NCBI RefSeq assembly: GCF_031769215.1
Contig: NW_026782232.1
Coordinates: 1 to 64,000, forward strand
Length of the DNA stretch: 64,000 bases
Direction of reading: 5' to 3'
From: Ylistrum balloti
Taxonomy: Eukaryota
Translations under genes and position numbers: made by a program
Shown: positions 32,993 to 51,935 of the stretch, piece by piece
Position numbering within the stretch: the first letter of the stretch is position 1
How the letters are laid out: each line of letters opens with the position of its first letter
Notes under the pieces: model-generated
Told to the model about the DNA's origin: nothing
The model's database searches: none
What the model saw: only the letters and a program-made list of their open reading frames with translations

Positions 32993-34604
32993 GCTGTCCA
33001 TGATGTTTGGAACCAAACATCAGAAATATTTAGCACTCTCAATATGTTTTGTTTACAAATTTTGATATTTATGTTGTTTAGTTGTGTATTGAACACTGTA
33101 TCCTTAATCTCAGCATCTCATCTCAAAACGTTACAGCTTTTAAAGTAGGTTTTTGTGATAAACTGATAGACACTGCTTTATATGACATTTTAGATATATA
33201 TTGCAAATAATTGACTTTCATGCTTAAATAGAAGTATTCTTTTGCTGCTACTGGTAAGCACCGCTGTCTTTCCAGTATAGTATATGAATCTTAAATGTTG
33301 TTTGATGGCTGAGTCATATGAGTATTCTTGTCAGAGTTGTTTACCAATATAGCTTTCCTTTTCCTCCCAATATACTGATTAAATAGGAGAAAACATAGTT
33401 AACATTTTCATGTAGTCATGTGGTATTGTTGAATTCTCATGTGGTACATGTTGAATTTGCTTAATTCATTGACTGTGATATTTTTTACACAAATTTAAAT
33501 GCAGTGTATACCTTCTTGAATTTGGAAAATTCAGTGATATTTACATAAGAATAATCAAAGGATTTTTTTTTCATTTTTGGAAAACAGTTAAGGTTTTGAC
33601 AAAGAGGAAATATTTCTTTGAAGGAATATCAAGAAGCAAATTGATATCAACATGGGTTTTGAAATTTATGAATGATAAAATGGTTTTACTCATAATTCTA
33701 AGCTAAACATTGTAAGGCCATTTATTATGAAGTCTTCCTCCACAATAAGAAGAGTTATTATAATGACACTTTTATGAGTAAACTTGTTTATGTGTTTGAA
33801 AGTGAGTAGGTGTGACTGTCATCATCCTATTTTTTCTGTGATATCAACTGTTCACTGGTATTTTTATATACGGATTACATTACCATAGGATATATTCTCG
33901 AGAGTCACATTTACGTTTACAATAAATAAAAAGGCTGTCTTTTGCATTCTTGAAAACGGCTATAATTTTCACATCTTTTCCGATGATAAATTTGATTCCT
34001 TAAACAATGAACATGAATAGATAGATATTTTGTGGCCATAATTTTTATGTTATGTAATACCAAACTTGCTGTTTGATGGAGTTTCAATAGATTTTAGTGT
34101 AGAACAGGAGATGTTCTGATTGCACCAATGGTGTATTATGACAGCAATCCTTTTGACCGGTTTTTTAGGTGACACTAACAGAGGTGCTGAGTTATATATG
34201 TGGGTAGATACATCCAAATTTTGTTGTGTCACTTCATATGTGTATAAGGTAATTTTATACGATAGTACCATATATGGACAGAGCATATAAAATACATGAA
34301 CCTAATAAATAGGCCTGGAGTCAAATATTGTAGTGTCTATCATTGATAGTGGTTTACAATTGCATAGACGGTCACCGTTTTCATGGGTTTTAATTCGTGT
34401 GATTTCGAGGTGATTTAACTATAATGAATTAAAAATTCATTATCTAGATATAAGTTGATGAATTATTTCTGTGAATATTGTTCCTGATGTCAAGTTTCAT
34501 CAAATTCATGATTTCGGGTTTAGCAGTCAATCATAACTATGATTTAATGGTAGTAATGAGCTAGTTATGCTTACAAACACATGTATTTGTGTACAGTGTA
34601 TATC

Positions 34605-34754: not shown

Positions 34755-35896
34755 CAGGTTATTATTGATGATCATGGCACCACAAAGTGTTATTGATGAT
34801 CATGACATCACAACAGGTTATTGATGATCATGTCATCACAAAGTGTTATTGATGATCATGTCATCACAACAGGTTATTGATGATCATGTCATCACAACAG
34901 GTTATTGATGATTATGACATCACAACAGGTTATTGATGATCATGTCATCACAAAGTGTTATTGATGATCATGGCACCACAAAGGGTCATTGATGATCATG
35001 TCATCACAACAGGTTATTGATGATCATGTCATCACAACAGGTTATTGATGATCATGTCATCACAACAGGTTATTGATGATCATGTCATCACAAAGTGTTA
35101 TTGATGATCATGGCACCACAAAGGGTCATTGATGATCATGTCATCACAACAGGTTATTGATGATCATGTCATCACAATGGGTTATTGATGATCATGACAT
35201 CACAACGGGTTATTGATGATCATGACATCACAACAGGTTATTGATGATTATGACATCAGAACAGGTTATTGATGATCACGACACCACAACAGGTTATTGA
35301 TGATCATGACATCACAACTGGTTATTGATGATCATAACATCACAACAGGTTATTGATGATCATGACATCACAACAGGTTATTGATGATCACGACACCACA
35401 ACAGGTTATTGATGATCATGTCATCACAATGGGTTATTGATGATCATGACATCACAACGGGTTATTGATGATCATGACATCACAACAGGTTATTGATGAT
35501 TATGACATCAGAACAGGTTATTGATGATCACGACACCACAGCAGGTTATTGATGATCATGACATCACAACTGGTTATTGATGATCATGACATCACAACAG
35601 GTTATTGATGATCATGACATCACAACAGGTTATTGATGATCACGACACCACAACAGGTTATTGATGATTATGACATCACAACAGGTTATTGATGATTATG
35701 ACATCACAACAGGTTATGACATCACAACAGGTTATTGATGATTATGACATCACAACAGGTTATAGATGATCATGACATCACAACAGGTTATTGATGATTA
35801 TGACATCACAGCAGGTTATTGATGATCATGACATCACAACAGGTTATTGATGATTATGACATCACAACAGGTTATTGATGATTATGACATCAGAAC
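34755..35896. repeat. 28-bp minisatellite, about 40 copies
   Basis: aggttattgatgatcatgacatcacaac with quasi-palindromic TGATG...CATCA core. Confidence 0.97.
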
Positions 35897-36202
35897 AATA
35901 TCATGACCAAAGATTAGATTAATGTTACTAATGTCAGTAAAATGTGGGAGGGTAACAGATATTTCTGAAAAATACAATTTTGGTGATGAAGATGGCTATG
36001 TTTGTTCTGAAATTGTAGCACATATATTTATCAGTTTTAGGAGGTAAGATGGAGGCTGAAGAAAAGTGTTATCAGTAACTGGTGGGTGTGGAGGGATGTT
36101 ATAGATTGTAACTATCAGTTCATTCAGCAAAGATAATCGTTGAAAGATGTGTTGTAAATAGAGGGAGGTCAATGTCTTCATTCTGATGGTCAAAACCAGA
36201 CT

Positions 36203-36704: not shown

Positions 36705-36949
36705 GGACAAATCGTCCAGTATGTGTGTAGGGAGAGTAGTCCTGTTGGTCCTGGCCCTGGCAATTGGCCATGCCCGGGCGGACACAAGTTCTATAACACG
36801 GACTCCAACCATAGGATGTTGTGATTGTGTTACTCTGATGCCTGACCCCCGCCCAAATATTGAACCCCAATATATGCCCTCTCCATTCCACATCAAAGTC
36901 AGCAAGACTGTCTACAACCCAAAGAACAGTCAAGCAGAGGAAATTAATG
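36705..36949 (+). CDS. FRRS1: FRRS1-like coding exon 1 (16 nt UTR, ATG 36721; signal peptide and start of Reeler)
   Basis: Acceptor ttcttttacag|GGAC; MCVGRVVLLVLALAIGHARA signal peptide; donor G|gtaatt, phase 1. Confidence 0.9.
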
Positions 36950-39900
36950 GTAATTATCTTATTTTTTAATTTATCTTATTAAGGTTGAACTGTACATGCA
37001 TATACATATACATATAAACCTGGTATTTCACATCTAAGCACTGAACCCACTTACTTTGTATTGAAAACATTAACAAATGAATTATCATCATGTGTTGATA
37101 CAAACTTCATCTAAATGATTCAAAGATTGTAATACACTGATTTTTTTGGTAGTGAACCTGACATCCGTCCAGCCCTTGACAGCTTTCACACGATTCATGA
37201 TACAGGCTGTGTATGTCAACACAGACGGTACAGTAAAAGACAACACACCACTTGGCAGGTTTATCGATCTCGACTACAACAGTACTGATCCTGAATTAAG
37301 AGGGAGAACAGAGATTACCTGTGCAGGCGGGGTAAGTAATTTAAGATGGTGGCTCTGTATGCTCTTTGTCTTAGGGTAGGTTTGACGTGGAGTGGGCCAC
37401 AGAAATGACCTGGATATCATGAGATTACCTTTAGAGATTAGAGATTATGTGTTAACCTGATCCAGGTATCTATAGATTACCTGTATATGTGTTGTGTTTA
37501 CTTTACCTTGATTTCCACAGATTACCTGTATTGGTGGTTTGTTAACCTTACCCTGATATCCACAGATTACCTGTATTGGTGTTGTGTTTACCTTACCCTG
37601 ATATCCACAGATTACCTGTAAAGGTGTTGTGTTTACCTTACCCTGATATCAACAGATTACCTGTATAGGTGGTTTGTTTACCTTACCCTGATATCAACAG
37701 ATTACCTGTTTAGGTGTTGTGTTTACCTTACCCTGATATCAACAGATTACCTGTATTGGTGTTGTGTTTACCTTACCTTGATATCCACAGATTACCTGTA
37801 TTGTTGTTGTGTTTACCTTACCCTGATCTTCACAGATTACCTGTATTGGTGTTGTGTTTACCTTACCCTGATATTCACAGATTACCTGTATTGGTGTTGT
37901 GTTTACCTTACCCTGATACCCACAGATTACCAGTAAATGTGTTGTGTTTACCTTACCTTGATATCCACAGATTACCAGTAAATGTGTTGTGTTTACCTTA
38001 CCCTGTTAACTGTAGATTACTGGCATGAATGCTGTGTTTACCTGACCCAGAGATTCATTGATTGATGTGTTTAACTGACCCCTAGATCCATAGACGTCCA
38101 CTATAAATAAGTTAGTGTTTACCTGTCCCAAACATCCATAGATTACCAGTATAAGTAAGTGTTTACCTATCACAAAGATCCATAGATTACCAGTATAAGT
38201 AAGTGTTTACCTGTCCCAAAGATCCATAGATTACCAGTATAAGTAAGTGTTTACCTGTCCCAAAGATCCATAGATTACCAGTATTAGTAATTGTTTACCT
38301 ATCACAAAGATCCATAGATTACCAGTATAAGTAAGTGTTTACCTGTCCCAAAGATCCATAGATTACAGTATTAGTAATTGTTTACCTATCACAAAGATCC
38401 ATAGATTACCAGTATAAGTAATTGTTTACCTGTCCCAAAGATCCATAGATTACCAGTATAAGTAAGTGTTTACCTGTCCCAAAGATCCATAGATTACCAC
38501 TATTAGTAAGTGTTTACCTGTCCCAAAGATCCATAGATTACCAGTATAAGTAAGTGTTTACCTGTCCCAAAGATCCATAGATTACCAGTATAAGTAATTG
38601 TTTACCTATCACAAAGATCCATAGATTACCAGTATAAGTAATTGTTAACCTATCACAAAGATCCAAAGATTACCAGTATAAGTAAGTGTTTACCTATCAC
38701 AAAGATCCATAGATTACCAGTATAAGTAAGTGTTTACCTGTCCCAAAGATCCATAGATTACCAGTATAAGTAAGTGTTTACCTGTCCCAAAGATCCATAG
38801 ATTACCAGTATAAGTAATTGTTTACCTATCACAAAGATCCATAGATTACCAGTATAAGTAATTGTTAACCTATCACAAAGATCCAAAGATTACCAGTATA
38901 AGTAAGTGTTTACCTATCACAAAGATCCATAGATTACCAGTATAAGTAAGTGTTTACCTGTCCCAAAGATCCATAGATTACCAGTATAAGTAAGTGTTTA
39001 CCTGTCCCAAAGATCCATAGATTACCAGTATAAGTAAGTGTTTACCTATCACAAACATCCATAGATTACCAGTATAAGTAAGTGTTTACCTATCACAAAG
39101 ATCCATAGATTACCAGTATAAGTAATTGTTTACCTATCACAAAGATCCATAGATTACCAGTATAAGTAATTGTTTACCTATCACAAAGATCCATAGATTA
39201 CCAGTATAAGTAAGTGTTTACCTGTCCCAAAGATCCATAGATTACCAGTATTAGTAAGTGTTTACCTATCACAAAGATCCATAGATTACCAGTATAAGTA
39301 AGCATTTACCTGTCCCAAAGATCCATAGATTACCAGTATAAGTAAGTGTTTACCTGTCCCAAAGATCCATAGATTACCAGTATAAGTAAGTGTTTACCTA
39401 TCACAAAGATCCATAGATTACCAGTATAAGTAAGTGTTTACCTGTCCCAAAGATCCATAGATTACCAGTATAAGTAAGCATTTACCTGTCCCAAAGATCC
39501 ATAGATTACCAGTATAAGTAAGTGTTTACCTGTCCCAAAGATCCATAGATTACCAGTATAAGTAAGTGTTTACCTATCACAAAGATCCATAGATTACCAG
39601 TATAAGTAAGTGTTTACCTATCACAAAGATCCATAGATTACCAGTATAAGTAATTGTTAACCTATCACAAAGATCCATAGATTACCAGTATAAGTAAGTG
39701 TTTACCTATCACAAAGATCCATAGATTACCAGTATAAGTAAGTGTTTACCTATCACAAAGATCCATAGATTACCAGTATAAGTAATTGTTTACCTATCAC
39801 AAAGATCCATAGATTACCAGTATAAGTAAGTGTTTACCTGTCCCAAAGATCCATAGATTACCAGTATTAGTTAGGTATTTACCTGATCCAGGTATCCAAA

Positions 39901-42900
39901 GATCCAATTGACTGGTGTGTATATATATATATATATATATATGTATATTATTGTTAAAATTACTGTTATCAGACTTTGACAACTAGTGACGTTTTTTTTT
40001 AAATAGGTTACTAGAAAGTCTTCTGACAGTGAAATTAGACAATGATCAATGAGCTCTTCATTTACAGTAAGGTTAAGATATTTAGTAAATTACCGTGAAT
40101 ATGGAAACATATGTAAACCTTTCTAAGAATGTGAAACAGTTACAATTATGCATTTTTATGATGATCTGTAGATGTGTATAGCTAAATAAAGAATGTTAAC
40201 CTTCTTGTGATGTTAAACAAACTCGAATGATAAAATGTATGGTGTATTAACTGTGTAGTTGTTATGTCTGATGGAATCGATTAGTTTCACTTGACATTCT
40301 GAAGGTATTGATGCAGAAATAATGAGTTAACCAACAGGTGTGCCTAGAATTTCACCTGCCCACTTCATGTTAAAAATGAATAAATTAAACGATTTTACGT
40401 AAAGAAATTTAAGATCTTTGCATATATGGTTAGTTATTATGTTCTACTTTCTGCAATAGTGAAGTAAATCATACACAGTATAATGTATATAATTTAAGAC
40501 ATGTTTTTACATTACAGCGTGCTACAAAACAAAGTAATGCCAACCAACTGAAGAAAAATGTGCGTCTGGTCTGGAAGCCCGACGTGACCATGAAGGGGCC
40601 TATTGTGTTCAGGTAATTTGTAGATACCAAGACACCTTCATGATTATCGCACTATAAAGAACACATCCAAATCTCATCTTTATAGTCTGTGAGGTTTTTA
40701 AGAAATTACGTAAACTTCCCTGTTAATTTTTCTCTGATAAACTCAGGTATGACACCAGTTCGTTTTTTTTTTTTGCATTTTCAGTTCCTATCATAATTGA
40801 TACTATGGGCTGTCACTTCAAGAGTCCTAGTGTACAGGATAACAATACCTGTACAGGTATCTTTGTGACACAGTATCTTTCATTGTTTAGATCTGTAGAT
40901 AATGACTGTATTTTGTCCTTTCATCTACATTCATGTGTGTAGCTTGTTTCACGGTTAAACACACCTAAGTTAGATACTCCACTGAACATCAATACCAATC
41001 TAACACATGTTAACTGTGTTAACTTTCCGCAGTTGTTTGTATGTTTAACAGCTTATTTTGTCTGAAGGAAGTGAGGGATGGGTAGGATAATTGTGTAAAT
41101 CTGTTATAAGGTGTTACTGAGGCTGTTTTAGAGAATACCGGTAAATGATTAGAGATTATGCACGGTAGATTGTCATTATCATATACCTGTATCATATATA
41201 AAAACTTAACACCTTCATGTCAGCGACAGACAGTATCATTTACATAATATCCATGAAAAATCTTTGGAGTGTAAACAGTGCACCACATCACTAGGTAAGG
41301 AATGTTCTGCCATGTAGTTAGAGAAGGCATGGGTGCTTTACCAATGTGAAATGCAGTGATCATTTCCCTATTAGGTGTAAGCTTCCTTCCCAATGGTAAA
41401 TGTAATTAAGTTTAATTATAGATTTGTTTTGTAGATACAAATGTATCTATATATGAATTTAGTCTGATTTGATATGAGGCTGTGTTTTAATTAGGACAGC
41501 TGACTGATTATATGTACACAGTTCTATATAAAGATACACATATAAGTATTCCGTGCTTGTATAGTTCAGTCACGGTGTTTAATAAACATACAGGGATTGT
41601 TATTTGGTTCATTTCTCACTGGTTGGAAACATTTTATATACACTGTATAGTCTCTGTGTCAAGGCTGTTTCTGTTGATAACTTCAGTTGCTTGATGAGGC
41701 TGCTTTCTGTTGATAACTTCAGTTGCTCGATGAGGCTGCTTTCTGTTGATAACTTCAGTTGCTCGATGAGGCTGCTTTCTGTTGATAACTTCAGTTGCTC
41801 GATGAGGCTGTTTCTGTTGATAACTTCAGTTGCTCGATGAGGCTGCTTTCTGTTGATAACTTCAGTTGCTCGATGAGGCTGCTTTCTGTTGAAAATCTCA
41901 GTTGCTCTGTCATCTCTTCATTGCCTCCCTTATTATTCTCACTTTGTAACTTTGTTATTTTACTGATGATATGAAACATTGGTGTCAGTTTTAATGTTCA
42001 TGCTGTCTTTCGCAGCAATATTCACAAGTTGCATTTAGCTGAGTTTGTCGAAGAGTGAAGTACTCTTCAACAACCAAGTTTGATATATAGGTAGATGATA
42101 GGTCGTATAACTTGAATCCAGATAAAAATATGAAATAGTAAAAAAAAATTCAAAACTGGCAAAATCTTCCTCAAATATGTTCAAATTGTCTTGAAATTTT
42201 GTACCTGTCTTCAGTAAGAAATGAACATAAACCTTTGAAATAGGCCTTGTGCTCATTGATTATAATTCTTTTTAATTCCTTAACTTCAATCTATAATTCT
42301 TAAAATGACTCAAAATTTACTGTAGTTCAACATGATTAACAAAAAACAAAAATTGTTGGGGACTTGATTGTTTAGAGAATCAAAGTGGAAAAAGAAAAAC
42401 AATCTGCGGAATACTTGTACTTTCTTGTCTTTTTTCTTTGTTGTATACGCTTTTCAAAGTATAAGAATATTCATGATTTATTTTCTTAACGTTAATGTTG
42501 AAACTTCTCTTATTTTATATTAGAAGGACCTATCACTGCATATATATTTCTATCCCTGTACTGTTGGGTGGAGATGAATATAAATATTTTAAAAATATAT
42601 TTATAAATATAAATTATAAGAAGTTTGTGTTAACTTATGAATCTCTTCAACAGGGCCACTTTCATTCAAGATGGCAACCGTTTCTGGGTGCGAGAACTGT
42701 CTGAGCCTGTCATTGACAAGAACGGTCCTCCCATGGACAAAAAACCTACAGATCCAAACGTAAGTGAGATGTAGATCTTGTTTATCTTACTATCATCACA
42801 ATGAGGAATTCACTTTTATTAATATTTGAAAGTCACATGACATTTTTTGCTGATGAAAGATAAATCTGTCTTTTCTTCCAAGGGAAAGACAGGTCAAACT

Positions 42901-45900
42901 CGACTGTTTTGAAAATGACACTCAAAAGAAAGTCACAATATTTTCTTCATGTAATCACTGAACAATCTGTTAGCATTATCAAAACACATCACTTTGATGA
43001 TGGCATGCTCTATTGAGCTCAGCTTTACCATACCTTGTAGCATTTTCTATTAGGAAAGTCTGGAAGAAAAATAATCAATCACATCTGTGTAACATAGACA
43101 GATAAGGCTCATCCAGTCTGATACTTCACTTCAAGATTGTTACTCATGGGAGGAGATTTCTCTTTATACTGAGGTTTCTCTTGCTTCAAAACAGAAATGA
43201 AACAATTATTCCATCTCATGTCAGGTCACACGGACAAGATTCTTCACATTTTTTCCAATTGTACTGTATTGCTTGGTTTCATTGTTGATATCCAGTTATG
43301 AAAGGTGGAGTGGTTTGTTGGGGAATAAACATTTTGCAGAACAGAAATAGACATATTTCTGTGGGAGACTTTTAGAAATTATTGCTTTCATAATCCTTAT
43401 TAACTTAAACACATGTTGAACATATTGCATTCTTTGTTAAATTACCATATCCTGTTTAGTCTGTCACTTGTACTAAACAAGTGGGGAAAACTTATGTTAA
43501 ACATGTTGTATTCCACTCACAGAGACTGCCTTTGATAGACCCAATAAACACGAGGGACTGTGGAACCAAAAAGGGTTGTTTCCGGATCCCTGAAGGCTGC
43601 TGGGAACCCTACTGTCAGTACATTGCCACCTGGGTCCACTTAGGAGGCAATCGGTACAGATTTGAAGTTGGAGGCATCACTGATGGGATCACAGACAGAT
43701 ATGTGTCACTTGCCATTTCGAATGACATCAGATGGGTAAGATATATCAAATGGCTCACCAATAGTTACTTTGCTTATCATTTGGATACACCACATATTAA
43801 GCAAATTGCCACCTTTTAAGTCTCGGAAATGATCAGATATCTCAAATATAGTCAAACTAGGTTATTTTAAAATCTGAAGAATTTATGACCACATTAATGT
43901 TGAAGTTTTTCTTCATTTTCAACAAATAATCTCTTTCTATCTTTGTTACAGTTATCAAACTTGTTGACTTGGATATATATAGATATATACATACTTTTTA
44001 TGGACAGATCTACTTTAAGATTACAATGTTCAAACTTTACCTATCACATAAAGACAAAAAAGTTATAAGTCTTGTCATTTAAAGACATTGTCCAATAATA
44101 ATTACAAAATTGTTGGGGTGGAGGGATTGGAGGATAGAGGTCAGAGAAAATGTACATAACCAATCGGATCTTGTTACACTCTCAATGAATTGTTTCATTG
44201 TTTGTAGGATAGAGGAAATTTCAATGGGATATGTATTGATGGGTATATTTATATGAATGTCTGTCAATATTTGTTTGTGTAAATTTTCAGGGTGGAGACT
44301 TGGTAATGGAGTGTGTCCACAATGGAGCTACAGGTCTAACACAGGTCTACCTGGCCAAGAGTGTTGACCACTTCACTCACAGACTCAAAAATGTAAGTAC
44401 TGAGTGCTGAGATACAATCAGTACAGGTCTATCTCACCAAGAGTGTTGACCACTTCAATCACAGACTCAAAAATGTAGGTACTGAGCAATGAGCTACAGG
44501 TTTACTTTTCTAAGAGTGTCAACCACATCTCTCACTGGCTTCAAAATTGTTAGTGCTTACTGTCACATAGTCTAGAATGTAAGTACGGTAACCATTCACC
44601 ACACTTACAGATTAAAAATAGTTTGTTAGCTCTAATTACATAGATTGAATGACAAATTTTTTTGTGAGATGAAAATGCTGCAGTCATATTTACCTTTCAA
44701 ATTATAAATATTGTTGGTTTCATTGCAGCCAAAGGCTGGTATAATAGCCGAAGAGGGACAGTTCCTTAATGGCCGCCTGCGATGTCGATTTGAGAAGGTG
44801 CCCCATCCAGATACCAAAGATTACCCCATGTCTGGCTATAGCCATCTTCTCATGTCAAGGGGTGTCGCAGAATCAGGTTAATTTTGTATTTATATACAAC
44901 AAAGACAGCTTCCAAATTTATATAAAAGAAATCATGGCAGAGTCCAGTTAATGATATAGTCATGTACAATGGAGGCTACTAATTGTATGCTAATAATGGT
45001 ATTTGTGTTTTACTTTGTGAAATACTCTGACTTTACAGAGATGAAAGATTATAGAGAATATATGTATTTTTGTAAAATTTCTGTACGGCCTCCCATGTAA
45101 TGCCTATTATGATGTAAGAACTAAGATAATAGACACGCTGATATTATAACATTAAAATGGCAAATTAAATACTCAAATACAACAGTTGATACTCAAATAC
45201 ATTCCTTGTACCAGCACAAACTAGTGAAGATATTTATGAAGCTCATTCTGACATATTCTTTTTTGTTGAAAACAATGGCTTATGTGAAAACAAAGGTTGC
45301 TTCTGTGTAAGCATTTGAAACGGTTAGATTGGTTGAACCTGCAAGGAAAATGCCAGGTACAGATCGTTTTCGAGGCAAGACTGCAGAATATTTGGCACAT
45401 ACAAATTGAGGGGTCAAACCATACCTGTTTGTAGTTTACTTGTTAAATATCATTAGTTTTCAGAATTTCACAATAAAGTAGGATCAGTACAATCACATAT
45501 TTCCGGGAGCATTGTGCTATTAGGACTGAGTAAAATGGAGGATATCTTAATGTTAGTTAATTGATTTAAGCTTGACAGGAAATTCTGAAATCAAGCATTT
45601 AGAGCTTCACATATATCAGTTCCAACATCCACCTACATGAACATTTGTGTTTAGTGGAATAATTGCAGACCACCTGAACCGTTTCAAAAGGGTTACACAA
45701 AAGTGTCCAAAGACTCTCAAAATCTCTTGTGTATGAGTAAAGTAAGGGAGATAACTCAAGAAAATGCTGTTTTACTACAGGTGAAGCTGCCCCACACAGA
45801 TTTGGTGTAGGAGAGATTCCTCTGTCCTCAGCTGATGAGATTACCCTCTCCTCTACAGCCAACATTGGTGATTACGCTCGTTACTCCCTTGTCAAGGGAC

Positions 45901-48900
45901 ATGGTAAGTAGATGGACTTTATGTCACGACATGATGAGTTCATCAGCAGTAGATTTTATTAATCAGAAATAATTTCCAAATTATTTATTTATTCAAATAA
46001 AAGGAGAAACATTTGACAACATTCTTGGTAAGATTTTAGTAGAGATATTTCTTTCTAGAAATTTTGTTTTTCAGGAAATAATTTTATCAGTCCTGTAAAT
46101 GGAGGGATGGTTATCTAAAATTGTATTAAATGTTAAAACAGTAAAATATCAAAACAACATTTTACAAGAAATTGGTAGAGTGTTTTCTTGTTGTATAGAA
46201 AATGTCACTGTACTGACTGCTAAGTTACCGTTTTGTTATGATCTTCCTCAATAAGTACCATCTTTGTTACAGGTATCCTCATGATTTTGGCATGGTGTTT
46301 CTTTGGCACCACTGGCATGCTCCTTATCAAATATTACCAAACCATGTGGCCAAACAAGCGTTTCTTCAGCCATAGATACTGGTTTATTGTAAGTAGCGAA
46401 TATTACTGCTCTGATATTAATGGTAATATCGTAATCATATTTCTAAGTAACACTAAAAGCAGAGAGTTACATGATTACTGGGTATGTCAATTTGATAGAA
46501 ATTACCCAACTTTCACTTTAAGTGGGCAATCGTTACAATCTACACCTATATAGCTTGTGTAATGTATCTATAACATTTTACAAATACCTACGGTGACTTG
46601 ATGTTTACAATATGATGAATGTAACAAATATACAGTTGTACTGGAAATGTTAGTTGTGAGAAATGAAACCAATTTCTAGGCCTGTGAACTTAGTAAATAA
46701 ATGTGAAAATACCGTAAAAACATGTCAAAAGAAATGGTAAGACATAATGACACAGAAATATACCCTCTCATGTTTTGAAACTTGGAAAAATTAATTGTTA
46801 TTAAAACGTATAAATGACTTTTTTCAATATAATAATTGTAGTAGTACTTCATAGCATATTTTTTTTCACTTTCCATGTATTTTAGAATATAATGCTAATA
46901 GTGTCTGAGCTACAAGGCCCTGAACAATGTGAACAAAAACTATTACTGAAATGATTTGTCATATAACACCTTTTTATTGAAATTGGCATCACTATTCACA
47001 AAGTTCTCATCGTCAATGTACAATAATGTAGCTATTAAAATGTTTGCACGAATTAAATGCTGAATTAAGTGACAGACAATGATAAGTTCACACAATATAA
47101 CAGATTCAGCTTTGATTTTTGTTTCACATGCAAGAGGTGCGAAACTTTCCCAGATAGAGGATGACCTAATGACCCTAATTAGTCATGATGAACTGTACAG
47201 GTGTACAACTTTGAACATCTTAATACCTTGATGATTTAGCTTGTAAAAATTATATTGGGAATGAAAATTGAACAATTCTTTGAGAGTGAAAGGTTAATTT
47301 GAACGTTATATATTACAGTTGTGAAAACAAATGTTCAAATATGTGGTGACATCCCTAATGATTACAGTTTAAAAGTTGCCACATAGTTCTACTGTAACCT
47401 TACCATTACTTGTGTTCTATGTGTGGTATTGTTGTGTTTCAGGGACATATTAACTGTATGGCGTGGCTGCTACTACTGGTGATCATCGCTATAATTCTAA
47501 TCTTTGTTGAGGTTGATGGGTACAGCAAAGCTGACTATCTACCCTACAAGGCTCATCCTATCTTGGGTATCATCATTTTTGTCTGTGTGATCCTTTGTGT
47601 AAGTATAATGTATCATGCCTTTGGTATTTTGTATAGGAAACATAGGCTGGTGAAGTGTAGCAGTGATTATAAAGCAAACTGGCATTATAAACCAAGAAAA
47701 ATTTTAAACCTGAAAAATTATGTGTTTAGTAGTATTATATACGAGAGTATCACCTATTTTATTATATTTATAATATAAGGTTAGATATCTGACAAATATT
47801 TTTTAAAAATATTTTTCCCAAATGATCGGATTTAATTAATTAATGTTGGGAGATATTTCTTGACAGAGTAAAAAAACAAAACCCTTGACTGGACATTGTA
47901 AACAAACTTATATCTCTCTGTGTAAAATCATACATAACTTGTTAACAGACCCCGGAACACTTGTTACCAAAGATATTTATTTTTGACAATCCAGTGGAAT
48001 ACATGTATTAGAATATTTAATTACATGTGTATTTGTGTTGGTGTTACACATATGATATGTATTTGTACAGTTCATCATTGCCCTAATCCGACCTGACGAG
48101 GATAACCGCTGTCGTCCAGTCTTTAACTGGTTCTACTGGTTATTTGGCACAGTAGCCTGGTGTCTGGCAAGTAAGTAGAAAGTACAAGGTGGATGACCTT
48201 GATGTCTGCTTCTGAAATCTGTTTCCTTGTTTCATACTGTATTGAAACTTGTGAATGTTAACAGTTCATATTTTCACGATTTCTTTTCAAAACGACCAAA
48301 TAGTAATTTAAACAATCAAAATTTTGCAATCTTGATGTGAAAGGACATCTAATACTCTTGTGTTTCATTATTTCATGGATTTAATTTTGGTGACTATGTT
48401 TATGTACCACAAAATAGTGAAAATATCATCCCCCAAAAAATAATCTGTTATACGGTATGTTTTATCCTATAATTCTATATCATAAGATGTAAATGCCACT
48501 GTTTAACCATCAACATGGATCTACTGATTATTTCATGTGTAACTTCATATGTAGTTTTGTGATTCTCACATTTGTTTGGTGTTCAATTTCAAATGTGATT
48601 TCCCCCATTTATGTAGAGATCAGTTTCAAAGTTTAACAATCTCTGTGTAATCCTTTTTTTAAATAATTTTTTAAAAAATATTTCGATTTTGTTATTCCAT
48701 AATAAGGTCTTCTTGTGAAGTAATTTTAAGTGATGATTTTTGTAAAATTTTTATAAAATTTCTCATTTAAATGATTTCTTTAGAACATTCTAGTTGCTTG
48801 CAAACATTTCTACAAGATGTGATATTAGTACTCATTACCTTTGACTTGTTTTCAGTCCCTAACATGTTTATTGGGATGGACTTTGGGAAGTCTATGGTGC

Positions 48901-51900
48901 CATGGTGGGCTACATGGATCCTGTGTATCTACATATTGTTCCACATCATCGTTGAGATCACCCTTGAGGTTCACCAATGTTGTACACACAAGAAAAATAA
49001 AGGTACATAACATCACTGGCTTACAGACATTGTCAGGGCTAAATAATACATACCTGGTATAACTCAAGGACTAGATAAAGGATGTCATTCAGGCTTGGTG
49101 TTGTTAGTGTTTACTTTCTCTTTGGGTATATATTGTATAGAAAATTATTTATGCTGTACCAACACATGATTACTTACTGTAGTAGTCAATGACATCTATA
49201 TATGACAATAATTTACAGTTTCTCTTTATACTTTGGAAACCAGTTTTCTCCTAAAGTTGCTTTTTTTCATGTGGTTCTAATTTTCATGATTGTCCAGGGT
49301 GTATTTAAACCACAAATTATAGTTCCAGTGAAAATTTAGTTCCAAGGTCGATAATGTATTTATAAAATCAATGGATATTTTCCTCCTTGATTGAAAGTTT
49401 ATCAAATTAATAAAGAAGTGCAAACATAACTTTAAAAGTATGAATTTTACTGACTTATAGAGGTAGGAATTCACTAGATATTGTTGAACAATATGGCCTG
49501 TTATGTAGTACCGAATTTTCCTGATTATAAGTCACATATTTTTTTCTCATGAGTCAGCTGATGTGTGGTCGGGAAAAAATAGGCAAGATAAAAAAAAACA
49601 AAAAAAAGAACATGAAGTGTACCAGTACCTGCCTGTTGTGTTTTTAGGACTGAAACATATCCTCTAGAACCATCATTTGCAATAGTATACAGGATGATTT
49701 GCAGATTGAAATGAAAATAACATTCTCTTGGATTTAATCAATCATACTAGTTAATGTGAATCGCAATAATATTTTCTGGACTTTCGCGGTTACTTGAAAG
49801 CCATAGCAGAAGTTTCTAATTGCATCCTGGGTTCGATAGGTCATCAGATTGTAGGTCAAATTCTAGCATAACTGCCATGCTTGTTTACGATATGAATGGC
49901 TTCGAGTAACTTACAAGAGAAAATAATATGGGAATTTAAGAATTTAACAGTACAGACGATGGAGAGATTGTTTAGTAAACAATATGTAAGGTCAGGCCCT
50001 ATATCTGTGCATAGACAATGCCTTTGAAGGCACCCAAACCAAACAAGTTCAATATTTCCTATTTCACATTTTTTGAAAGACATCGATAAAATTAAGGATT
50101 GTGTATAATTCATTTGCAAACTTTTATTAAATGTTTAACTGACGATCTTGATAAGTAGTCCTCCATTGTCTGTCATATCAACTAAATTTGGTCAACATAA
50201 CGGTTACCACTCCGTAAGACAGGGTGTGGCTTATATTTGAATCAAATTGAAAAAAAAAAGGTAGAAATTAGCTCTGCAGCTTATAACCTCGAAAATACAG
50301 TACTTAATGTTTCTGCACATTGATAGCATGAAAAAGTTGACCCCAAAAAATGTATCCAATGATAAAAACAACAGTATATACTATATAGGACAGATACATA
50401 ACAGTTAAACTAACCATGTTTGTTTGATGATAAGGCTTTTATTTCTTTATGTACTCAATGAAGATAATCTTTTTACAGAACGAAGGAAGAAATATGAGTT
50501 CCAGAAGAGAGACAATCCTAAAGCATACATCCCAGAGCCAGAACCAGCAGTAAGTATCACTACCGGAAGAGGACTTTACAATATAGCTTAGCACACATGA
50601 AATGACAATATAACGACAAGCAAAGCACCAGACCTGTTACATCAAATAGTCACAATGAAATTGGGTGAAAATAAGGTTTATTTTCACGTAGGAAGTTGTG
50701 ATGGGAGTCTTTTTTCGGTGCCTGTGCCCTAAGTTGATTCTTAGAGATAAGCGTAACTTGTTAGAGATAAGTCTACCATGCAACTTCCCCAAACCGTAAA
50801 CCTTCCTTATACTCGTTCATTTCTGAATACCAAACCCATTTTGTGTCGGATGTGATTGAAGTTTATAATATACTTCTGCAAACCAGTCTTGCTTGAGCAA
50901 TCAAAACCCGAGCTCTGACCTGTGCATTATTGAATATTTTGTGCCTCAGGTTCACATGTGTCACCTGTAGGCATTATATATAATAGCTAACCCTTTCAGG
51001 AGGATTATATTTAGCATAAGGTATAGTTATAAATGTTGACAAGAAAAAGTCATACAGAATGCATCCATTATTACACTTCTGCAAGTAAAGGCTATAGACA
51101 TTATGCAGAGCTAGAAAGCTACAGTTTCGAATCTCAGTGGCACACATTATGTAATATGTCATTATAACACATACAAAATTGAATCGTTGATGGAATGTTG
51201 TTTTGAAAGAGAATTTTGTCATCCTGGTCAACCAAAACACCAGTTATCAAATATATAGATTGTAAACACTTCCAAATAAGAGGACCGTCATTACAGGGGA
51301 CTGGGTTTGACATAGGAATACAATTGTGGTAGTCTCGTATCTTTGTACATACATGTTATTTATTCTAAGTCACATTGGCACCCATGTAGGGACCCGGGAA
51401 TAGTATTTAGCCATGCCCCACCGGTGTCGCTGTGACCCCTGGAAACTCGAGGACGAGTTATTTCCTGGAGGGGAAGTATGTAACCCTGGTAAAATACTAG
51501 CAGCAATATACCACTCGGCTAGGGAGAACGTCACTTTAGCTCGATTGGTTGAGCGTCAGACTAGTAAGCCAGGGGTCCCGGGTTCGTTTCCTAGCGGAGG
51601 CATTGAAATAAATATTGACCTCTGTTGCACAATTGTAATGCAAAGATAATGTGATGTACAGATGGCATCTACTCTGTCAACTTAATTTACTCTTGCAACT
51701 CAAACTCTCCTTTAACTGGTCAAATGTTTTATGTCTCATGCATGGTCTGTCTGGCTGAAAAAACCCCACTTTATTGCTAACTTGTTAGAGAAAGGTATAT
51801 TGATAAATTACTAAGTTTTGTCTCCATTATATCTGTTTGCAGGGTCGGAGGTTCAAGAAGAACATGCTGTTAGCTCACTTCATTGTGACATGTATCGTAG

Positions 51901-51935
51901 CTCTCATCATGGTCATCTCCATAGCAGCATCCTAA
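36721..51935 (+). CDS. FRRS1: Ferric-chelate reductase 1 (FRRS1/SDR2)-like protein, 14 coding exons, 625 aa: signal peptide + Reeler + DOMON + cytochrome b561
   Basis: join(36721-36949,37153-37331,40518-40612,42654-42759,43523-43735,44291-44392,44729-44876,45781-45903,46273-46388,47443-47598,48071-48170,48856-49002,50479-50549,51843-51935) = 1878 nt, no internal stop, all GT-AG. Family motifs: EPQ..PSPF, F.RFMIQA, VWKP..VFRATF, CGTKKGCF, KGHGILMILAW, WFIGH, AHPILG, FNWFYW. Which family member or paralog it is cannot be resolved here. Confidence 0.93.
37153..37331 (+). CDS. FRRS1: FRRS1-like exon 2 (Reeler)
   Basis: tttttggtag|TGAAC...GGCGGG|gtaagt; (V)NLTSVQPLTAFTRFMIQAV...EITCAGG. Confidence 0.92.
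37480..38030. repeat. 45-bp minisatellite, about 12 copies (coding intron 2)
   Basis: cacagattacctgtattggtgttgtgtttaccttaccctgatatc; explains ORF 37714-38028. Confidence 0.95.
38105..39870. repeat. 44-bp minisatellite, about 40 copies (coding intron 2)
   Basis: agattaccagtataagtaagtgtttacctgtcccaaagatccat; related to the adjacent 45-mer. Confidence 0.97.
39917..39945. repeat. (TA)n microsatellite
   Basis: gtgtatatatatatatatatatatatgtata. Confidence 0.9.
40518..40612 (+). CDS. FRRS1: FRRS1-like exon 3 (Reeler)
   Basis: attacag|CGTGCT...TTCAG|gtaatt; RATKQSNANQLKKNVRLVWKPDVTMKGPIVF(R). Confidence 0.9.
41662..41906. repeat. 36-bp minisatellite, about 6.8 copies
   Basis: cgatgaggctgctttctgttgataacttcagttgct; explains ORFs 41604-41840 and 41791-41979. 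Confidence 0.96.
42036..42330. mobile_element. Possible non-autonomous Helentron/HINE-like remnant
   Basis: TTAGCTGAG start followed by hairpin TTGTCGAAGAGT-gaagt-ACTCTTCAACAA (42045-42073), resembling a Helentron end. Family unverified. Confidence 0.35.
42654..42759 (+). CDS. FRRS1: FRRS1-like exon 4 (end of Reeler, linker)
   Basis: cttcaacag|GGCC...CCAAAC|gtaagt; ATFIQDGNRFWVRELSEPV...PTDPN. Confidence 0.9.
43523..43735 (+). CDS. FRRS1: FRRS1-like exon 5 (Cys-rich linker, start of DOMON)
   Basis: actcacag|AGACTG...AGATGG|gtaag; DCGTKKGCFRIPEGCWEPYC...YVSLAISNDIRW. Confidence 0.93.
44291..44392 (+). CDS. FRRS1: FRRS1-like exon 6 (DOMON)
   Basis: ttttcag|GGTGGA...AAAAAT|gtaagt; GGDLVMECVHNGATGLTQVYLAKSVDHFTHRLKN. 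Confidence 0.92.
44421..44559 (+). pseudogene. Two degenerate tandem copies of the 3' half of exon 6 plus its donor
   Basis: Copy 2 acaggtctatctcaccaagagtgttgaccacttcaatcacagactcaaaaat|gtaggt (GT 44475); copy 3 more decayed (gttagt at 44549). Confidence 0.85.
44729..44876 (+). CDS. FRRS1: FRRS1-like exon 7 (DOMON)
   Basis: cattgcag|CCAAAG...TCAG|gttaat; EEGQFLNGRLRCRFEK...HLLMSRGVAES. Confidence 0.9.
45781..45903 (+). CDS. FRRS1: FRRS1-like exon 8 (DOMON His363; first cytochrome b561 His398)
   Basis: tactacag|GTGAAG...CATG|gtaagt; EAAPHRFG...YSLVKGH. Confidence 0.92.
46273..46388 (+). CDS. FRRS1: FRRS1-like exon 9 (cytochrome b561 TM1)
   Basis: gttacag|GTATCC...TTTATT|gtaagt; GILMILAWCFFGTTGMLLIKYY...YWFI. 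Confidence 0.94.
47443..47598 (+). CDS. FRRS1: FRRS1-like exon 10 (TM2-TM3; His439, His475)
   Basis: gtttcag|GGACAT...CTTTGT|gtaagt; GHINCMAW...KAHPILGIIIFVCVILC. Confidence 0.94.
48071..48170 (+). CDS. FRRS1: FRRS1-like exon 11 (TM3 end, TM4; Tyr511 at the His4 position)
   Basis: ttgtacag|TTCATC...GGCAA|gtaagt; FIIALIRPDEDNRCRPVFNWFYWLFGTVAWCLA. Confidence 0.93.
48856..49002 (+). CDS. FRRS1: FRRS1-like exon 12 (TM5)
   Basis: gttttcag|TCCCT...AAAG|gtacat; PNMFIGMDFGK...ILFHIIVEITLEVHQCC. Confidence 0.92.
49953..50172. mobile_element. Inverted-repeat pair, MITE-like
   Basis: CAGACGATGGAG versus CTCCATTGTCTG (11/12 complementary), about 195 bp apart, in a locally CpG-richer intron segment. 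Confidence 0.35.
50479..50549 (+). CDS. FRRS1: FRRS1-like exon 13 (cytoplasmic loop)
   Basis: tttttacag|AACGA...CCAGCA|gtaagt; RRKKYEFQKRDNPKAYIPEPEPA; phases match both neighbours. Confidence 0.88.
51325..51629 (+). mobile_element. TRIM-type non-autonomous LTR element with a tRNA-derived LTR (Helenus/biv-TRIM-like)
   Basis: ...GTCACA-t-PBS TGGCACCCATGTAGGGAC (51376-51393); PPT GGAGGGGAAG (51467-51476); LTR TGTAAC...GTTGCA (51479-51629) with A/B boxes; CAAT at 51321-51324 and 51630-51633. Confidence 0.72.
51843..51935 (+). CDS. FRRS1: FRRS1-like exon 14 (last TM helix, stop TAA 51933-51935)
   Basis: gtttgcag|GGTCGG; GRRFKKNMLLAHFIVTCIVALIMVISIAAS*. Confidence 0.9.
   Translation, partial: GRRFKKNMLLAHFIVTCIVALIMVISIAAS

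What the first reader, a model, noticed from the sequence alone, without database searches (positions are those of the whole stretch)
48071..48170. Fourth cytochrome b561 haem ligand is Tyr, not His, in an otherwise intact FRRS1-like gene
Seen: exon 11 reads RPVFNWFYWLFGT; codon TAC at 48134-48136 (Tyr511). The other three ligand His are present (His398 KGHG, His439 WFIGH, His475 AHPILG), and the TM3 N/Q-P motif reads CF instead. Established: b561 domains bind two haems through four His; FRRS1-type proteins have FNWxHW here, and His2/His4 hold the cytosol-side haem that takes electrons from ascorbate. Inference: that haem is lost or re-ligated His/Tyr, so the 625-aa ORF may encode a pseudo-reductase or a protein with new redox chemistry. 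CAC to TAC is one transition, so an allele or sequencing error is possible.
Basis: partly seen in the sequence, partly recalled or inferred. Interest (0 to 1): 0.75.

Follow-up and report, generated by a model that had tools for sequence, protein, structure and literature searches.

The report
Scallop b561 haem ligand His-to-Tyr
In the scallop Ylistrum balloti, an expressed and well-conserved membrane electron-transfer gene has swapped one of its four haem-holding histidines for tyrosine, along with the neighbouring residues that served that histidine, and two other mollusc groups made the same set of changes independently, so it looks like a repeatable redesign of the inner haem site rather than an error.

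Summary
Exon 11 (48071-48170) carries TAC at 48134-48136, which is Tyr511 of a 14-exon, 625-aa gene identical to the NCBI protein 'putative ferric-chelate reductase 1 homolog [Ylistrum balloti]'. A correctly spliced transcript contig carries the same letters, so a sequencing or assembly error is excluded.

Three other scallop genera are 89-91% identical and keep His, Asn-Pro and Ala. Ylistrum alone has K421Q, N489C, P490F, H511Y and A513L. The last four codons carry 7 base changes.

dN/dS is 0.03 among the other scallops. On the Ylistrum branch it is 0.09 overall and 0.12 in the b561 domain, so the gene is maintained while the domain evolves faster.

Tyr at this position arose three times in the mollusc orthogroup: in Ylistrum, in heteroconch bivalves and in an Elysia clade (AU test of a single origin, p = 1e-34). 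Each time Asn at H3+14 and Lys at H1+23 were lost too (chance about 2e-5). Published work says the first positions H4 and the second is a candidate ascorbate-binding residue.

H2, the propionate-binding Lys and the outer haem site stay conserved. I read this as a re-ligated His/Tyr, low-potential cytoplasmic haem. Loss of that haem cannot be excluded.

No earlier scan note covers this Tyr. Note s1-240744, on the same gene, covers the DOMON Met-to-Trp change.

The parts
36721..51935 (+). Coding region of the FRRS1-like gene. The 14 exons are 36721-36949, 37153-37331, 40518-40612, 42654-42759, 43523-43735, 44291-44392, 44729-44876, 45781-45903, 46273-46388, 47443-47598, 48071-48170, 48856-49002, 50479-50549 and 51843-51935 (stop included). 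The product is 625 aa: signal peptide, Reeler, DOMON, b561 (5 TM) and a C-terminal TM.
   Evidence: the only GT-AG chain whose translation equals P0118; exons 5-12 are joined exactly this way in a transcript contig. Pfam finds Reeler at 36-180 and Cytochrom_B561 at 398-530. AF2 helices at 393-419, 434-461, 474-494, 504-530, 539-583 and 597-624.
48071..48170 (+). Exon 11 (aa 490-523): end of TM3, cytoplasmic loop 2 and the start of TM4 with the H4 position.
48134..48136 (+). TAC = Tyr511, at the position of the fourth haem ligand (H4, cytoplasmic haem). The codon is CAY (His) in Pecten, Mizuhopecten and Argopecten.
47596..47598 (+). TGT = Cys489 (H3+14), last codon of exon 10. AAY (Asn) in the other scallops. 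Asn or Gln in all 76 b561 domains that keep His at H4.
   Evidence: The role of H3+14 is described in PMC10691727.
48071..48073 (+). TTC = Phe490 (H3+15), first codon of exon 11. CCC (Pro) in the other scallops. Pro in all 25 His orthologs and in the other Tyr lineages. This change is specific to Ylistrum.
48140..48142 (+). TTA = Leu513 (H4+2). GCR (Ala) in the other scallops. Leu or Val also in the other Tyr lineages.
46338..46340 (+). CAA = Gln421 (H1+23). Lys in all 25 His orthologs. Thr in the other two Tyr lineages.
   Evidence: PMC10691727 lists H1+23 as a candidate ascorbate-binding basic residue.
46326..46328 (+). ATC = Ile417 (H1+19). Thr in 23 of 25 His orthologs. Met/Val or Ser in the other Tyr lineages.
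45900..45902 (+). CAT = His398 (H1, non-cytoplasmic haem), kept.
47446..47448 (+). CAT = His439 (H2, partner of position 511 on the cytoplasmic haem), kept here and in all 17 Tyr rows.
47554..47556 (+). CAT = His475 (H3, non-cytoplasmic haem), kept.
46329..46331 (+). AAA = Lys418 (H1+20, the residue that salt-bridges a propionate of the cytoplasmic haem in Dcytb and At b561), kept in all Tyr lineages.
   Evidence: PMC10691727.
43733..43735 (+). TGG = Trp274, at the position of the DOMON haem-ligand Met. Shared with all pteriomorph orthologs. The His partner (His363, 45795-45797) is kept.

Best explanation
SHOWN. The gene is an expressed, correctly spliced, selectively maintained member of a lophotrochozoan FRRS1-like (reeler-DOMON-b561) family. 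On the Ylistrum lineage the cytoplasmic haem centre of its b561 domain was rebuilt. The axial ligand H4 became Tyr511. The residue that positions H4 (H3+14 Asn) became Cys489. Its neighbour Pro became Phe490, Ala at H4+2 became Leu513, and the cytoplasmic-face Lys at H1+23 became Gln421. The same core set (H4 to Tyr, H3+14 Asn to an aliphatic residue, H1+23 Lys to Thr) arose independently in heteroconch bivalves and in an Elysia clade of sea slugs and has been kept there since. INFERRED, and the mechanism I commit to. The cytoplasmic haem b is still bound, now through His439 and Tyr511. A phenolate ligand stabilises ferric iron and lowers the potential, as it does in haemoglobin M and in His/Tyr haem proteins. 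Ascorbate can then no longer feed electrons in as it does in FRRS1 or Dcytb, which makes the ascorbate-binding Lys and the His-positioning Asn dispensable. The outer bis-His haem (His398/His475) and the ectodomains stay under constraint. The protein therefore works as something other than a canonical ascorbate-driven ferric reductase.
For: The change is real and expressed. It is derived: Pecten, Mizuhopecten and Argopecten orthologs (89-91% identical, no gaps) read N-P, H and A, and 7 base changes lie in codons 489, 490, 511 and 513. The gene is maintained: NG86 dN/dS is 0.03 among the His scallops and 0.087 on the Ylistrum branch, 0.12 in b561 and 0.04 in DOMON. Of 40 Ylistrum-only residue changes, 21 are in b561 (Fisher p = 0.023). 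Three origins of Tyr appear in all 200 bootstrap trees, and the AU test rejects one Tyr clade with p = 1e-34. A blind scan of 625 columns finds only T417, K421, N489 and H511 both conserved in 25 His orthologs and changed in all three Tyr lineages. Leaving out column 511, 2 columns are observed against 0.006 expected among the invariant columns, P about 2e-5 (computed by hand from the counts). Across 95 b561 domains, all 76 with His at H4 have N/Q at H3+14 and K/R at H1+23, while all 19 without His lack N/Q and 18 lack K/R. The published roles of these positions fit (PMC10691727). Evidence that the haem is retained: H2, Tyr, Lys at H1+20, W435, F436, R496, R504, N508, G479 and G529 are invariant or nearly so in all Tyr rows over deep time. 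The replacement is always Tyr and never drifts to Phe. The Argonauta ortholog, which lost H2 and H4, is changed at most of the tabulated haem-site positions, including H1+20, H3+4 and both Arg, and has a very long branch (2.66). His/Tyr axial ligation of b haem is an established natural mode (CgHmuT His141/Tyr240, PMC4926363).
Against: There are no spectra and no haem stoichiometry, and I could not inspect model coordinates. In the two older Tyr lineages Gly at H4+4, a haem contact conserved across cytochromes b561, is Trp, and the small residue at H3+18 is relaxed (A, G, L, F or I). Both fit a filled, haem-free pocket. All the convergent changes go from polar to non-polar, and no base that could hydrogen-bond a tyrosinate is gained, unlike Arg242 in CgHmuT. 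The transcript contig may come from the same animal as the assembly, so fixation of the Tyr in the species is not shown.
Confidence: 0.5

Rival explanations
1. The cytoplasmic haem is lost. Tyr511, Phe490 and Leu513 (and Trp at H4+4 in the older lineages) fill the empty pocket. His439 and Tyr511 persist as a buried hydrogen-bonded pair that holds the helix bundle together. The protein keeps only the outer haem and acts as a one-haem or non-redox membrane protein, a pseudo-reductase.
For:: H4+4 Gly to Trp in all 11 heteroconchs and in 2 of 3 rows of the Elysia clade. H3+18 is relaxed in heteroconchs. The changes go towards bulkier, non-polar residues (N to C/I, P to F, A to L, K to Q/T, T to I/M). 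PMC10691727 calls H4+4 and H3+18 haem contacts. In the sequence sets made here, Pfam no longer scores the b561 domain of the heteroconch members.
Against: H2, Lys at H1+20 (the propionate partner) and the cytoplasmic-face Arg, Trp, Phe and Asn residues stay invariant in the Tyr lineages, which is unexpected for an abandoned site. Tyr never drifts to Phe. Ylistrum still has Gly515 and Ala493. Argonauta shows what real abandonment looks like.
Confidence: 0.3
2. The gene is decaying. The ligand change marks relaxed selection on the way to a pseudogene.
For: The non-synonymous rate in b561 on the Ylistrum branch is about 4-5 times higher than in the other scallops. The DOMON Met ligand is also missing.
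Against: dN/dS is 0.087 overall and 0.12 in b561, far below 1. The ORF is intact, all 13 introns are GT-AG, and a spliced transcript is present at depth 117. The DOMON Trp is old and shared by scallops, mussels, oysters, a pearl oyster and an ark shell. The parallel Tyr lineages have kept the gene across the unionid-venerid split.
Confidence: 0.05
3. The change is a rare allele or an artefact of the sequenced individual, and the species normally has His.
For: CAC to TAC is a single transition. The table of read differences was truncated, so the base in the other individuals (X1, X3, X5) was not seen. The RNA contig may come from the same animal.
Against: The RNA and the genome agree. The Tyr comes with N489C, P490F, A513L and K421Q, which is 8 or more base changes, in a gene with dN/dS 0.03. 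Only one contig at normal depth covers the exon in each DNA run.
Confidence: 0.05
4. Tyr511 and His439 form a redox-active Tyr-His pair (proton-coupled electron transfer), with Trp nearby in the older lineages. The pair would replace the inner haem as the electron relay to the outer haem.
For: The Tyr hydroxyl and H2 are strictly conserved together, Trp is gained at H4+4 in two lineages, and the cytoplasmic-face residues are kept.
Against: There is no precedent in this family. The distance to the outer haem is unknown. This is pure inference.
Confidence: 0.05

Closest known systems
FRRS1 / SDR2 (human) and Drosophila CG8399: the reeler-DOMON-cytochrome b561 (CYBDOM) ferric-chelate reductases
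   Same: The architecture is the same: signal peptide, Reeler, DOMON, a b561 domain with H1-H4 in TM1-TM4, the FNWxHW-type TM4 motif and an N/Q-P motif in TM3 (PMC10691727).
   Different: H4 is Tyr, H3+14 is Cys rather than Gln/Asn, H1+23 is Gln rather than Lys/Arg, and the DOMON Met is Trp. In the tree the gene sits in a separate lophotrochozoan clade, about 27% identical to the oyster FRRS1 that groups with CG8399. It is therefore a paralog family, not the FRRS1 ortholog.
Orthologs in Pecten maximus, Mizuhopecten yessoensis and Argopecten irradians (XP_033738489, XP_021369048, XP_069127108)
   Same: 625 aa, 89-91% identical, the same 14-exon structure and the same DOMON Trp.
   Different: They keep Lys421, Asn489-Pro490, His511 and Ala513.
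Heteroconch bivalve orthologs (Sinanodonta, Mercenaria, Mactra, Mya) and the Elysia clade
   Same: Tyr at H4, an aliphatic residue at H3+14, no Lys at H1+23, Leu or Val at H4+2, and H2 kept.
   Different: They arose independently. They also have Trp at H4+4, they keep Pro at H3+15, and most keep the DOMON Met. Heteroconchs have Cys at H3+22.
Dcytb (CYBRD1, PDB 5ZLE/5ZLG) and Arabidopsis cytochrome b561-B (4O6Y/4O7G)
   Same: They are the best structural matches of the modelled b561 domain (TM 0.58-0.63). The profile aligns H1-H3 and aligns Asn489 with Dcytb Gln134.
   Different: They are six-TM single-domain proteins with four His ligands, and sequence similarity is very low (E = 0.42).
His/Tyr-ligated haem proteins (CgHmuT His141/Tyr240, PMC4926363; from my own knowledge haemoglobin M variants, HasA, MauG)
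   Same: One His and one Tyr face each other across a b-type haem. Haemoglobin M shows that an axial His to Tyr change keeps the haem and locks it ferric.
   Different: The folds are unrelated. Those Tyr ligands usually have a hydrogen-bonding base, and none was gained here. Ligation in this protein is not shown.

Membership tests
Eukaryotic cytochrome b561 domain (Pfam PF03188) | Profile match above Pfam's gathering score | tested here: met
   residues 398-530, 28.6 bits against a cut-off of 23 (Pecten ortholog 32.0).
Eukaryotic cytochrome b561 domain (Pfam PF03188) | Four conserved haem-ligand histidines H1-H4 | tested here: not met
   H1 = His398, H2 = His439 and H3 = His475 are present. 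H4 is Tyr511. The position is fixed by gap-free alignment to 91%-identical orthologs that have His there.
Eukaryotic cytochrome b561 domain (Pfam PF03188) | Helical bundle fold of solved cytochromes b561 | tested here: met
   the AF2 domain model has pLDDT 79.9. The top Foldseek hits are 5ZLE (TM 0.63/0.58) and 4O6Y/4O7G (0.59/0.58), probability 1.00, although the E-values are only 0.01-0.03.
Eukaryotic cytochrome b561 domain (Pfam PF03188) | Binds two b haems and is reduced by ascorbate | not testable with these tools
   This needs the expressed protein.
FRRS1/SDR2/CG8399-type CYBDOM | Signal peptide, Reeler, DOMON and b561 in that order | tested here: met
   Reeler 36-180 (60.3 bits) and b561 398-530. 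DOMON 234-342 scores only 19 bits (cut-off 32.7), but it aligns throughout with orthologs whose DOMON passes (P0107 at 46.2, P0116 at 34.1); the model is a beta-sandwich over 220-356.
FRRS1/SDR2/CG8399-type CYBDOM | DOMON haem ligands Met and His | tested here: not met
   the Met position is Trp274, as in all pteriomorph orthologs. The His partner (His363) is present.
FRRS1/SDR2/CG8399-type CYBDOM | Orthology to FRRS1/CG8399 | tested here: not met
   the gene lies in a mollusc clade (100/100) with nemertean and other relatives. The oyster FRRS1 (27% identical) groups with Drosophila CG8399 outside it, with a long-branch caveat.
FRRS1/SDR2/CG8399-type CYBDOM | Ferric-chelate reductase activity | not testable with these tools
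   The source's name is automatic annotation only.
His/Tyr-ligated haem centres | Tyr oxygen and His nitrogen placed on opposite faces of a bound haem | not testable with these tools
   Tyr511 occupies the H4 position opposite H2 by homology. The coordinates of the models could not be inspected, and AF2 places no haem.
His/Tyr-ligated haem centres | A hydrogen-bonding base next to the Tyr (such as Arg242 in CgHmuT) | tested here: inconclusive
   none of the changes shared by the three Tyr lineages introduces a base. Lys418, Arg496 and Arg504 are kept nearby, but their geometry is unknown.

The most novel reading that the evidence does not exclude
Molluscan FRRS1-like proteins hold a natural, repeatedly evolved class of b561 domain. 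In it the cytoplasmic haem is ligated His/Tyr, or is replaced by a Tyr-His redox pair. This state is reached through a fixed set of coupled substitutions (H4 to Tyr, H3+14 Asn lost, H1+23 Lys lost, later H4+4 Gly to Trp). The result would be a membrane cytochrome with a different donor, a different potential or a different direction of electron flow. Ylistrum would be a young intermediate that can be compared directly with 90%-identical His-bearing scallop orthologs.
Probability: 0.4. Interest if true: 0.8.

Novelty: new variant of a known kind. Interest (0 to 1): 0.66.

Why it matters
The four histidines are treated as the defining and universally conserved feature of cytochromes b561. Sequences that lack them are usually dropped from family studies (PMC10691727). 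Here a Tyr at the fourth position is real, expressed and selectively maintained, and it was reached three times with the same second-shell changes.

This gives three things:
- Evolutionary confirmation of the proposed roles of H3+14 (positioning H4) and H1+23 (cytoplasmic substrate site).
- A natural near-isogenic pair, Ylistrum against Pecten at 91% identity, for testing what a His/Tyr or haem-free inner site does to transmembrane electron transfer.
- A warning that 'ferric-chelate reductase' annotations in bivalves and some sea slugs cover proteins that probably cannot take electrons from ascorbate.

Tried and rejected
- Pfam and PDB sequence searches with single exons gave nothing usable, because the exons are too short.
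- I did not type the spliced protein. Instead the 70-aa DOMON exon went to the representative search. That search gave relatives, and a word search with one of them gave the window's own protein as P0118.
- The look-up of Pecten isoform X2 failed because only the longest product is on record. I used isoform X1's locus instead.
- The Argopecten genomic locus lacked the first two exons. I used the transcript L004.
- Foldseek with the full-length model was dominated by the reeler domain and by beta-sandwich noise. The b561 domain had to be folded alone.
- The profile search of PDB sequences found only Dcytb, at E = 0.42. No FRRS1 or CYBDOM structure was found.
- Rfam found nothing in the window.
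- Two literature searches found no paper reporting a natural Tyr at a b561 haem-ligand position. The library is incomplete, so this is weak evidence of novelty.
- I rejected misalignment of the Tyr, because the scallop alignment has no gaps.
- I rejected a single ancient origin of Tyr followed by reversals (AU test).
- I rejected gene conversion as the cause of the low exon 10-11 identity, because dS in b561 on the Ylistrum branch (0.55) is close to the gene-wide value (0.47).
- Not done: distances in the AF2 models, because no coordinates are available.
- Not done: branch-site codon models.
Full report
OBSERVATION. The stretch 48071-48170 is an exon bounded by AG and GTAAGT. It reads FIIALIRPDEDNRCRPVFNWFYWLFGTVAWCLA, with TAC at 48134-48136. 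Pfam and PDB searches with single exons gave nothing, so I first had to establish the gene.

GENE AND ORGANISM.
- I searched the 70-aa DOMON exon (43523-43732) against 1.84 billion representative proteins. It found 105 relatives.
- A word search with one of them (P0028) returned P0118, a 625-aa NCBI protein named 'putative ferric-chelate reductase 1 homolog [Ylistrum balloti]'. P0118 is 100% identical to the translation of window exons 5-13.
- Only one GT-AG chain of 14 coding exons (36721-51935) translates to P0118 exactly.
Cys489 is the last codon of exon 10 and Phe490 is the first codon of exon 11.
- Pfam on the whole protein gives Reeler (36-180, 60.3 bits), Cytochrom_B561 (398-530, 28.6 bits, cut-off 23) and a sub-threshold DOMON (234-342, 19 bits).
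- An AF2 model has mean pLDDT 83.6, above 90 over most of the membrane part. It has helices at 393-419, 434-461, 474-494, 504-530, 539-583 and 597-624.
- With an N-terminal signal peptide and ectodomains, this topology puts H1 and H3 at the outer ends of TM1 and TM3. It puts H2, position 511, residue 489 and residue 421 at the cytoplasmic ends.
- This agrees with PMC10691727: H1/H3 hold the non-cytoplasmic haem, H2/H4 hold the cytoplasmic haem, and in CG8399/FRRS1-type proteins H1-H4 lie in TM1-TM4.
- The b561 domain folded alone has as its best PDB matches human Dcytb 5ZLE (TM 0.63/0.58) and Arabidopsis cytochrome b561 4O6Y/4O7G.

IS THE TAC REAL?
- Public contigs were laid on 43400-49100. 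Run X6 holds a 4592-nt contig at depth 117 that skips every intron at GT..AG. It matches eight exons, including exon 11, with no mismatch.
- DNA runs X1, X3 and X5 show no such joints. I therefore take X6 to be cDNA. That is an inference, because the run's kind is only guessed in the record.
- Genome and mRNA agree, which excludes a sequencing or assembly error.
- The DNA contigs of three other samples cover the exon as single contigs at normal depth. Their letter at 48134 was not shown because the table of differences was truncated. Fixation in the species is therefore likely but not proven.

CLOSE ORTHOLOGS KEEP HIS.
- The 90% cluster of P0118 holds orthologs from Pecten maximus, Mizuhopecten yessoensis and Argopecten irradians.
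- They are 625 aa and align without gaps. They are 89-91% identical to Ylistrum and 94-96% identical to each other.
- All three read N-P at 489-490, His at 511 and Ala at 513.
- I extracted their coding sequences from their genomic or transcript loci. They share the same 14-exon structure.
- The codons are as follows.

| Position | Other scallops | Ylistrum |
|---|---|---|
| 489 | AAY | TGT |
| 490 | CCC | TTC |
| 511 | CAY | TAC |
| 513 | GCR | TTA |

- That makes seven base changes in four codons, which no single slip could produce.

SELECTION.
- NG86 dN/dS is about 0.03 among the three His scallops and 0.056-0.066 in comparisons with Ylistrum.
- By the three-taxon branch estimate, the Ylistrum branch (plus stem) has 0.087 overall, 0.04 in DOMON and 0.12 in b561.
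- Of 40 residues changed only in Ylistrum, 21 lie in the 183-residue b561 core. Only 11 of the 42 sites that vary among the other three lie there (Fisher p = 0.023).
- Fourteen of those 21 changes lie at the cytoplasmic ends of TM1-TM4 or in the two cytoplasmic loops.
- The gene is therefore under purifying selection, while the cytoplasmic half of its b561 domain evolved several times faster on this branch.

THE SAME CHANGE ELSEWHERE.
- A second word search and alignments show a mollusc orthogroup that mostly keeps N-P and His. These members are the chiton, 14 gastropods, Solemya, and mussel-, oyster- and pearl-oyster-type sequences, plus the other scallops.
- Tyr is found in all 11 heteroconch bivalve rows (Sinanodonta, Mercenaria, Mactra, Mya and transcript assemblies). 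It is also found in a three-row clade containing Elysia marginata.
- An IQ-TREE analysis (LG+C20, 50 rows) recovers the expected groups: scallops 100/100, Heteroconchia 100/100, and Heterobranchia 100/100 with the Elysia clade (97/92) nested among His-bearing slugs and snails.
- Tyr needs three changes in every one of 200 bootstrap trees. The AU test rejects a single Tyr clade with p = 1e-34.
- All outgroups have His, so His is ancestral.

COUPLED SITES.
- I scanned all 625 columns for sites that are conserved in at least 85% of the 25 His orthologs and changed in all three Tyr lineages. Exactly four came out.

| Site | Position relative to ligands | His orthologs | Ylistrum | Heteroconchs | Elysia clade |
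|---|---|---|---|---|---|
| 417 | H1+19 | Thr | Ile | Met/Val | Ser |
| 421 | H1+23 | Lys | Gln | Thr | Thr |
| 489 | H3+14 | Asn | Cys | Ile/Leu/Val | Ile |
| 511 | H4 | His | Tyr | Tyr | Tyr |

- Among the 109 columns invariant in the His rows, three are changed in all three lineages, against 0.012 expected.
- Column 511 defines the groups. Leaving it out, two are observed against 0.006 expected, P about 2e-5. I computed this by hand from the counts.
The 19 without His all lack Asn/Gln, and 18 of them lack Lys/Arg.
- The 19 comprise three Tyr origins, Argonauta with Cys, and a distant multi-DOMON paralog (P0087) with Phe.
- PMC10691727 gives these positions matching roles, independently of my scan. 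H3+14 (Dcytb Gln134) hydrogen-bonds the H4 backbone and, through a water molecule, the H4 imidazole. H1+23 is a conserved basic residue of the proposed cytoplasmic ascorbate site of CG8399. H4+4 Gly and a small residue at H3+18 contact the cytoplasmic haem. H1+20 salt-bridges a haem propionate.
- A profile-to-PDB alignment puts Asn489 opposite Dcytb Gln134.

WHAT IS KEPT.
- In all Tyr rows the following stay invariant or nearly so: H1, H3, Gly at H3+4 and Gly at H4+18 (the outer haem), H2, Lys418 (H1+20), Trp435, Phe436, Arg496, Arg504 and Asn508.
- The Argonauta ortholog has lost H2 (Tyr), H4 (Cys) and the DOMON Met (Glu). It is changed at most of these positions and has a very long branch (2.66). 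That is what abandonment looks like.
- The two older Tyr lineages also have Trp at H4+4, and the heteroconchs have a relaxed H3+18. Ylistrum still has Gly515 and Ala493 and looks like an early stage of the same path.

MECHANISM.
- Shown: the bis-His cytoplasmic haem centre, which is the electron entry point of this family, has been specifically rebuilt in a gene that is otherwise maintained.
- Inferred: one of two states. I favour the first at about 5:3.
- State (a): the haem stays, bound by His439 and Tyr511. The reasons are that H2, the Tyr hydroxyl and the propionate-binding Lys are all conserved for very long periods. The replacement is Tyr each time and never Phe. Axial His-to-Tyr changes in haemoglobin M keep the haem as a ferric phenolate complex (my own knowledge). 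His/Tyr b haems also exist in nature (CgHmuT, PMC4926363).
- A phenolate ligand would lower the potential, so ascorbate could no longer reduce the haem. That would explain why the ascorbate-site Lys and the His-positioning Asn become dispensable at the same time.
- The longer Tyr side chain would push the haem away from TM4. That would explain the bulkier residues at H4+2, at H3+15 and, later, at H4+4.
- State (b): the haem is lost and the pocket is filled. The Gly-to-Trp change, the relaxed H3+18 and the uniformly polar-to-non-polar direction of change point that way.
- In either state the protein should not work as a canonical ascorbate-driven ferric reductase.
- In pteriomorphs the DOMON Met ligand is also missing (Trp274). 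This is shared by scallops, mussels, oysters, Pinctada and Tegillarca, so it long predates the Tyr. In Ylistrum only the outer bis-His haem remains canonical.

COMPARISON AND NOVELTY.
- The protein has the FRRS1/SDR2/CG8399 architecture, but it is a lophotrochozoan paralog. It is about 27% identical to the oyster FRRS1 that groups with CG8399.
- It passes the Pfam and fold tests for b561, fails the four-histidine criterion, and fails the DOMON Met criterion.
- Two literature searches in the held library found no report of a natural Tyr at a b561 ligand position. That is weak evidence of absence.
- I class it as a new variant of a known kind. The single Tyr matters less than the recurrent, coupled remodelling and the near-isogenic His/Tyr scallop pair it offers for experiments.

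CAVEATS.
- All functional statements are inferences from sequence.
- The transcript may come from the same animal as the assembly.
- Several Tyr-lineage rows are unnamed transcript assemblies.
- The dN/dS branch estimate is a distance approximation with dS near 0.5-1.
- The coordinates of the models could not be inspected.

Noticed in passing
window 43733-43735 (Trp274), with His363 at 45795-45797: The DOMON residue at the position of the haem-ligand Met is Trp. This is true not only here but in all pteriomorph orthologs seen: Pecten, Mizuhopecten, Argopecten, mussel-type, oyster-type, Pinctada and Tegillarca. Solemya, gastropods, the chiton and most heteroconchs keep Met, while Mya and one unnamed assembly have Cys. 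The His partner is conserved. So the change reported in note s1-240744 is ancient and shared, and it predates the Tyr511 change.
   Followed up: partly
protein P0039 (Argonauta hians): The cephalopod ortholog has H2 as Tyr, H4 as Cys and the DOMON Met as Glu. It has also lost the propionate-binding Lys, both cytoplasmic Arg residues and the haem-contact glycines, and it sits on a very long branch (2.66). It looks like a fully non-redox descendant of the family.
   Followed up: partly
heteroconch rows P0028 and P0106-P0115 (alignment): All 11 heteroconch orthologs have Cys in place of the otherwise invariant Pro at H3+22, and Trp in place of Gly at H4+4. Pfam no longer scores their b561 domain.
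   Followed up: partly
protein P0087 (1031 aa, several DOMON repeats): This distant paralog has Phe at H4, Cys at H3+14 and Gln at H1+23. It is a further independent case of the same coupled loss.
   Followed up: no
window 45310-45691 (intron 7): Contig depth in the DNA runs jumps about 15-fold here (540-610 against 33 in X1), with many loose ends. This looks like a dispersed repeat or transposon fragment inside the intron.
   Followed up: no
window 37448-39884 (intron 2) and 34762-35897 (0.8 kb upstream of the start codon): There are large minisatellites: two 44-bp arrays of about 55 and 40 copies filling 2.4 kb of intron 2, and a 28-bp array of 41 copies just upstream of the gene. Further arrays lie at 41662-41907 (36 bp), 32667-32996 (43 bp) and 28504-29594 (50 bp, 22 copies, strong G over C skew).
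   Followed up: no
window 3982-6221: A GC-rich block (61% against 30-37% elsewhere) is made of 34-bp units (CGACGCCTACCGACCGACTGACCGACGACGGACT). The middle part (4928-5503) is in the opposite orientation. Rfam finds no RNA family there.
   Followed up: no
window 46371-46373 (His432) and 48104-48106 (Asn501): Ylistrum gained a His in cytoplasmic loop 1 (Q432H, at H2-7) and lost one in cytoplasmic loop 2 (H501N, at H4-10) relative to the other scallops. The other Tyr lineages do not share this. I do not know whether His432 could reach the haem.
   Followed up: no
loci L001 (Pecten) and L002 (Mizuhopecten): Both species have a longer isoform X1 (645 and 640 aa) that starts from an upstream alternative first exon and adds 15-20 residues before the signal peptide. 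No such isoform was listed for Ylistrum.
   Followed up: no
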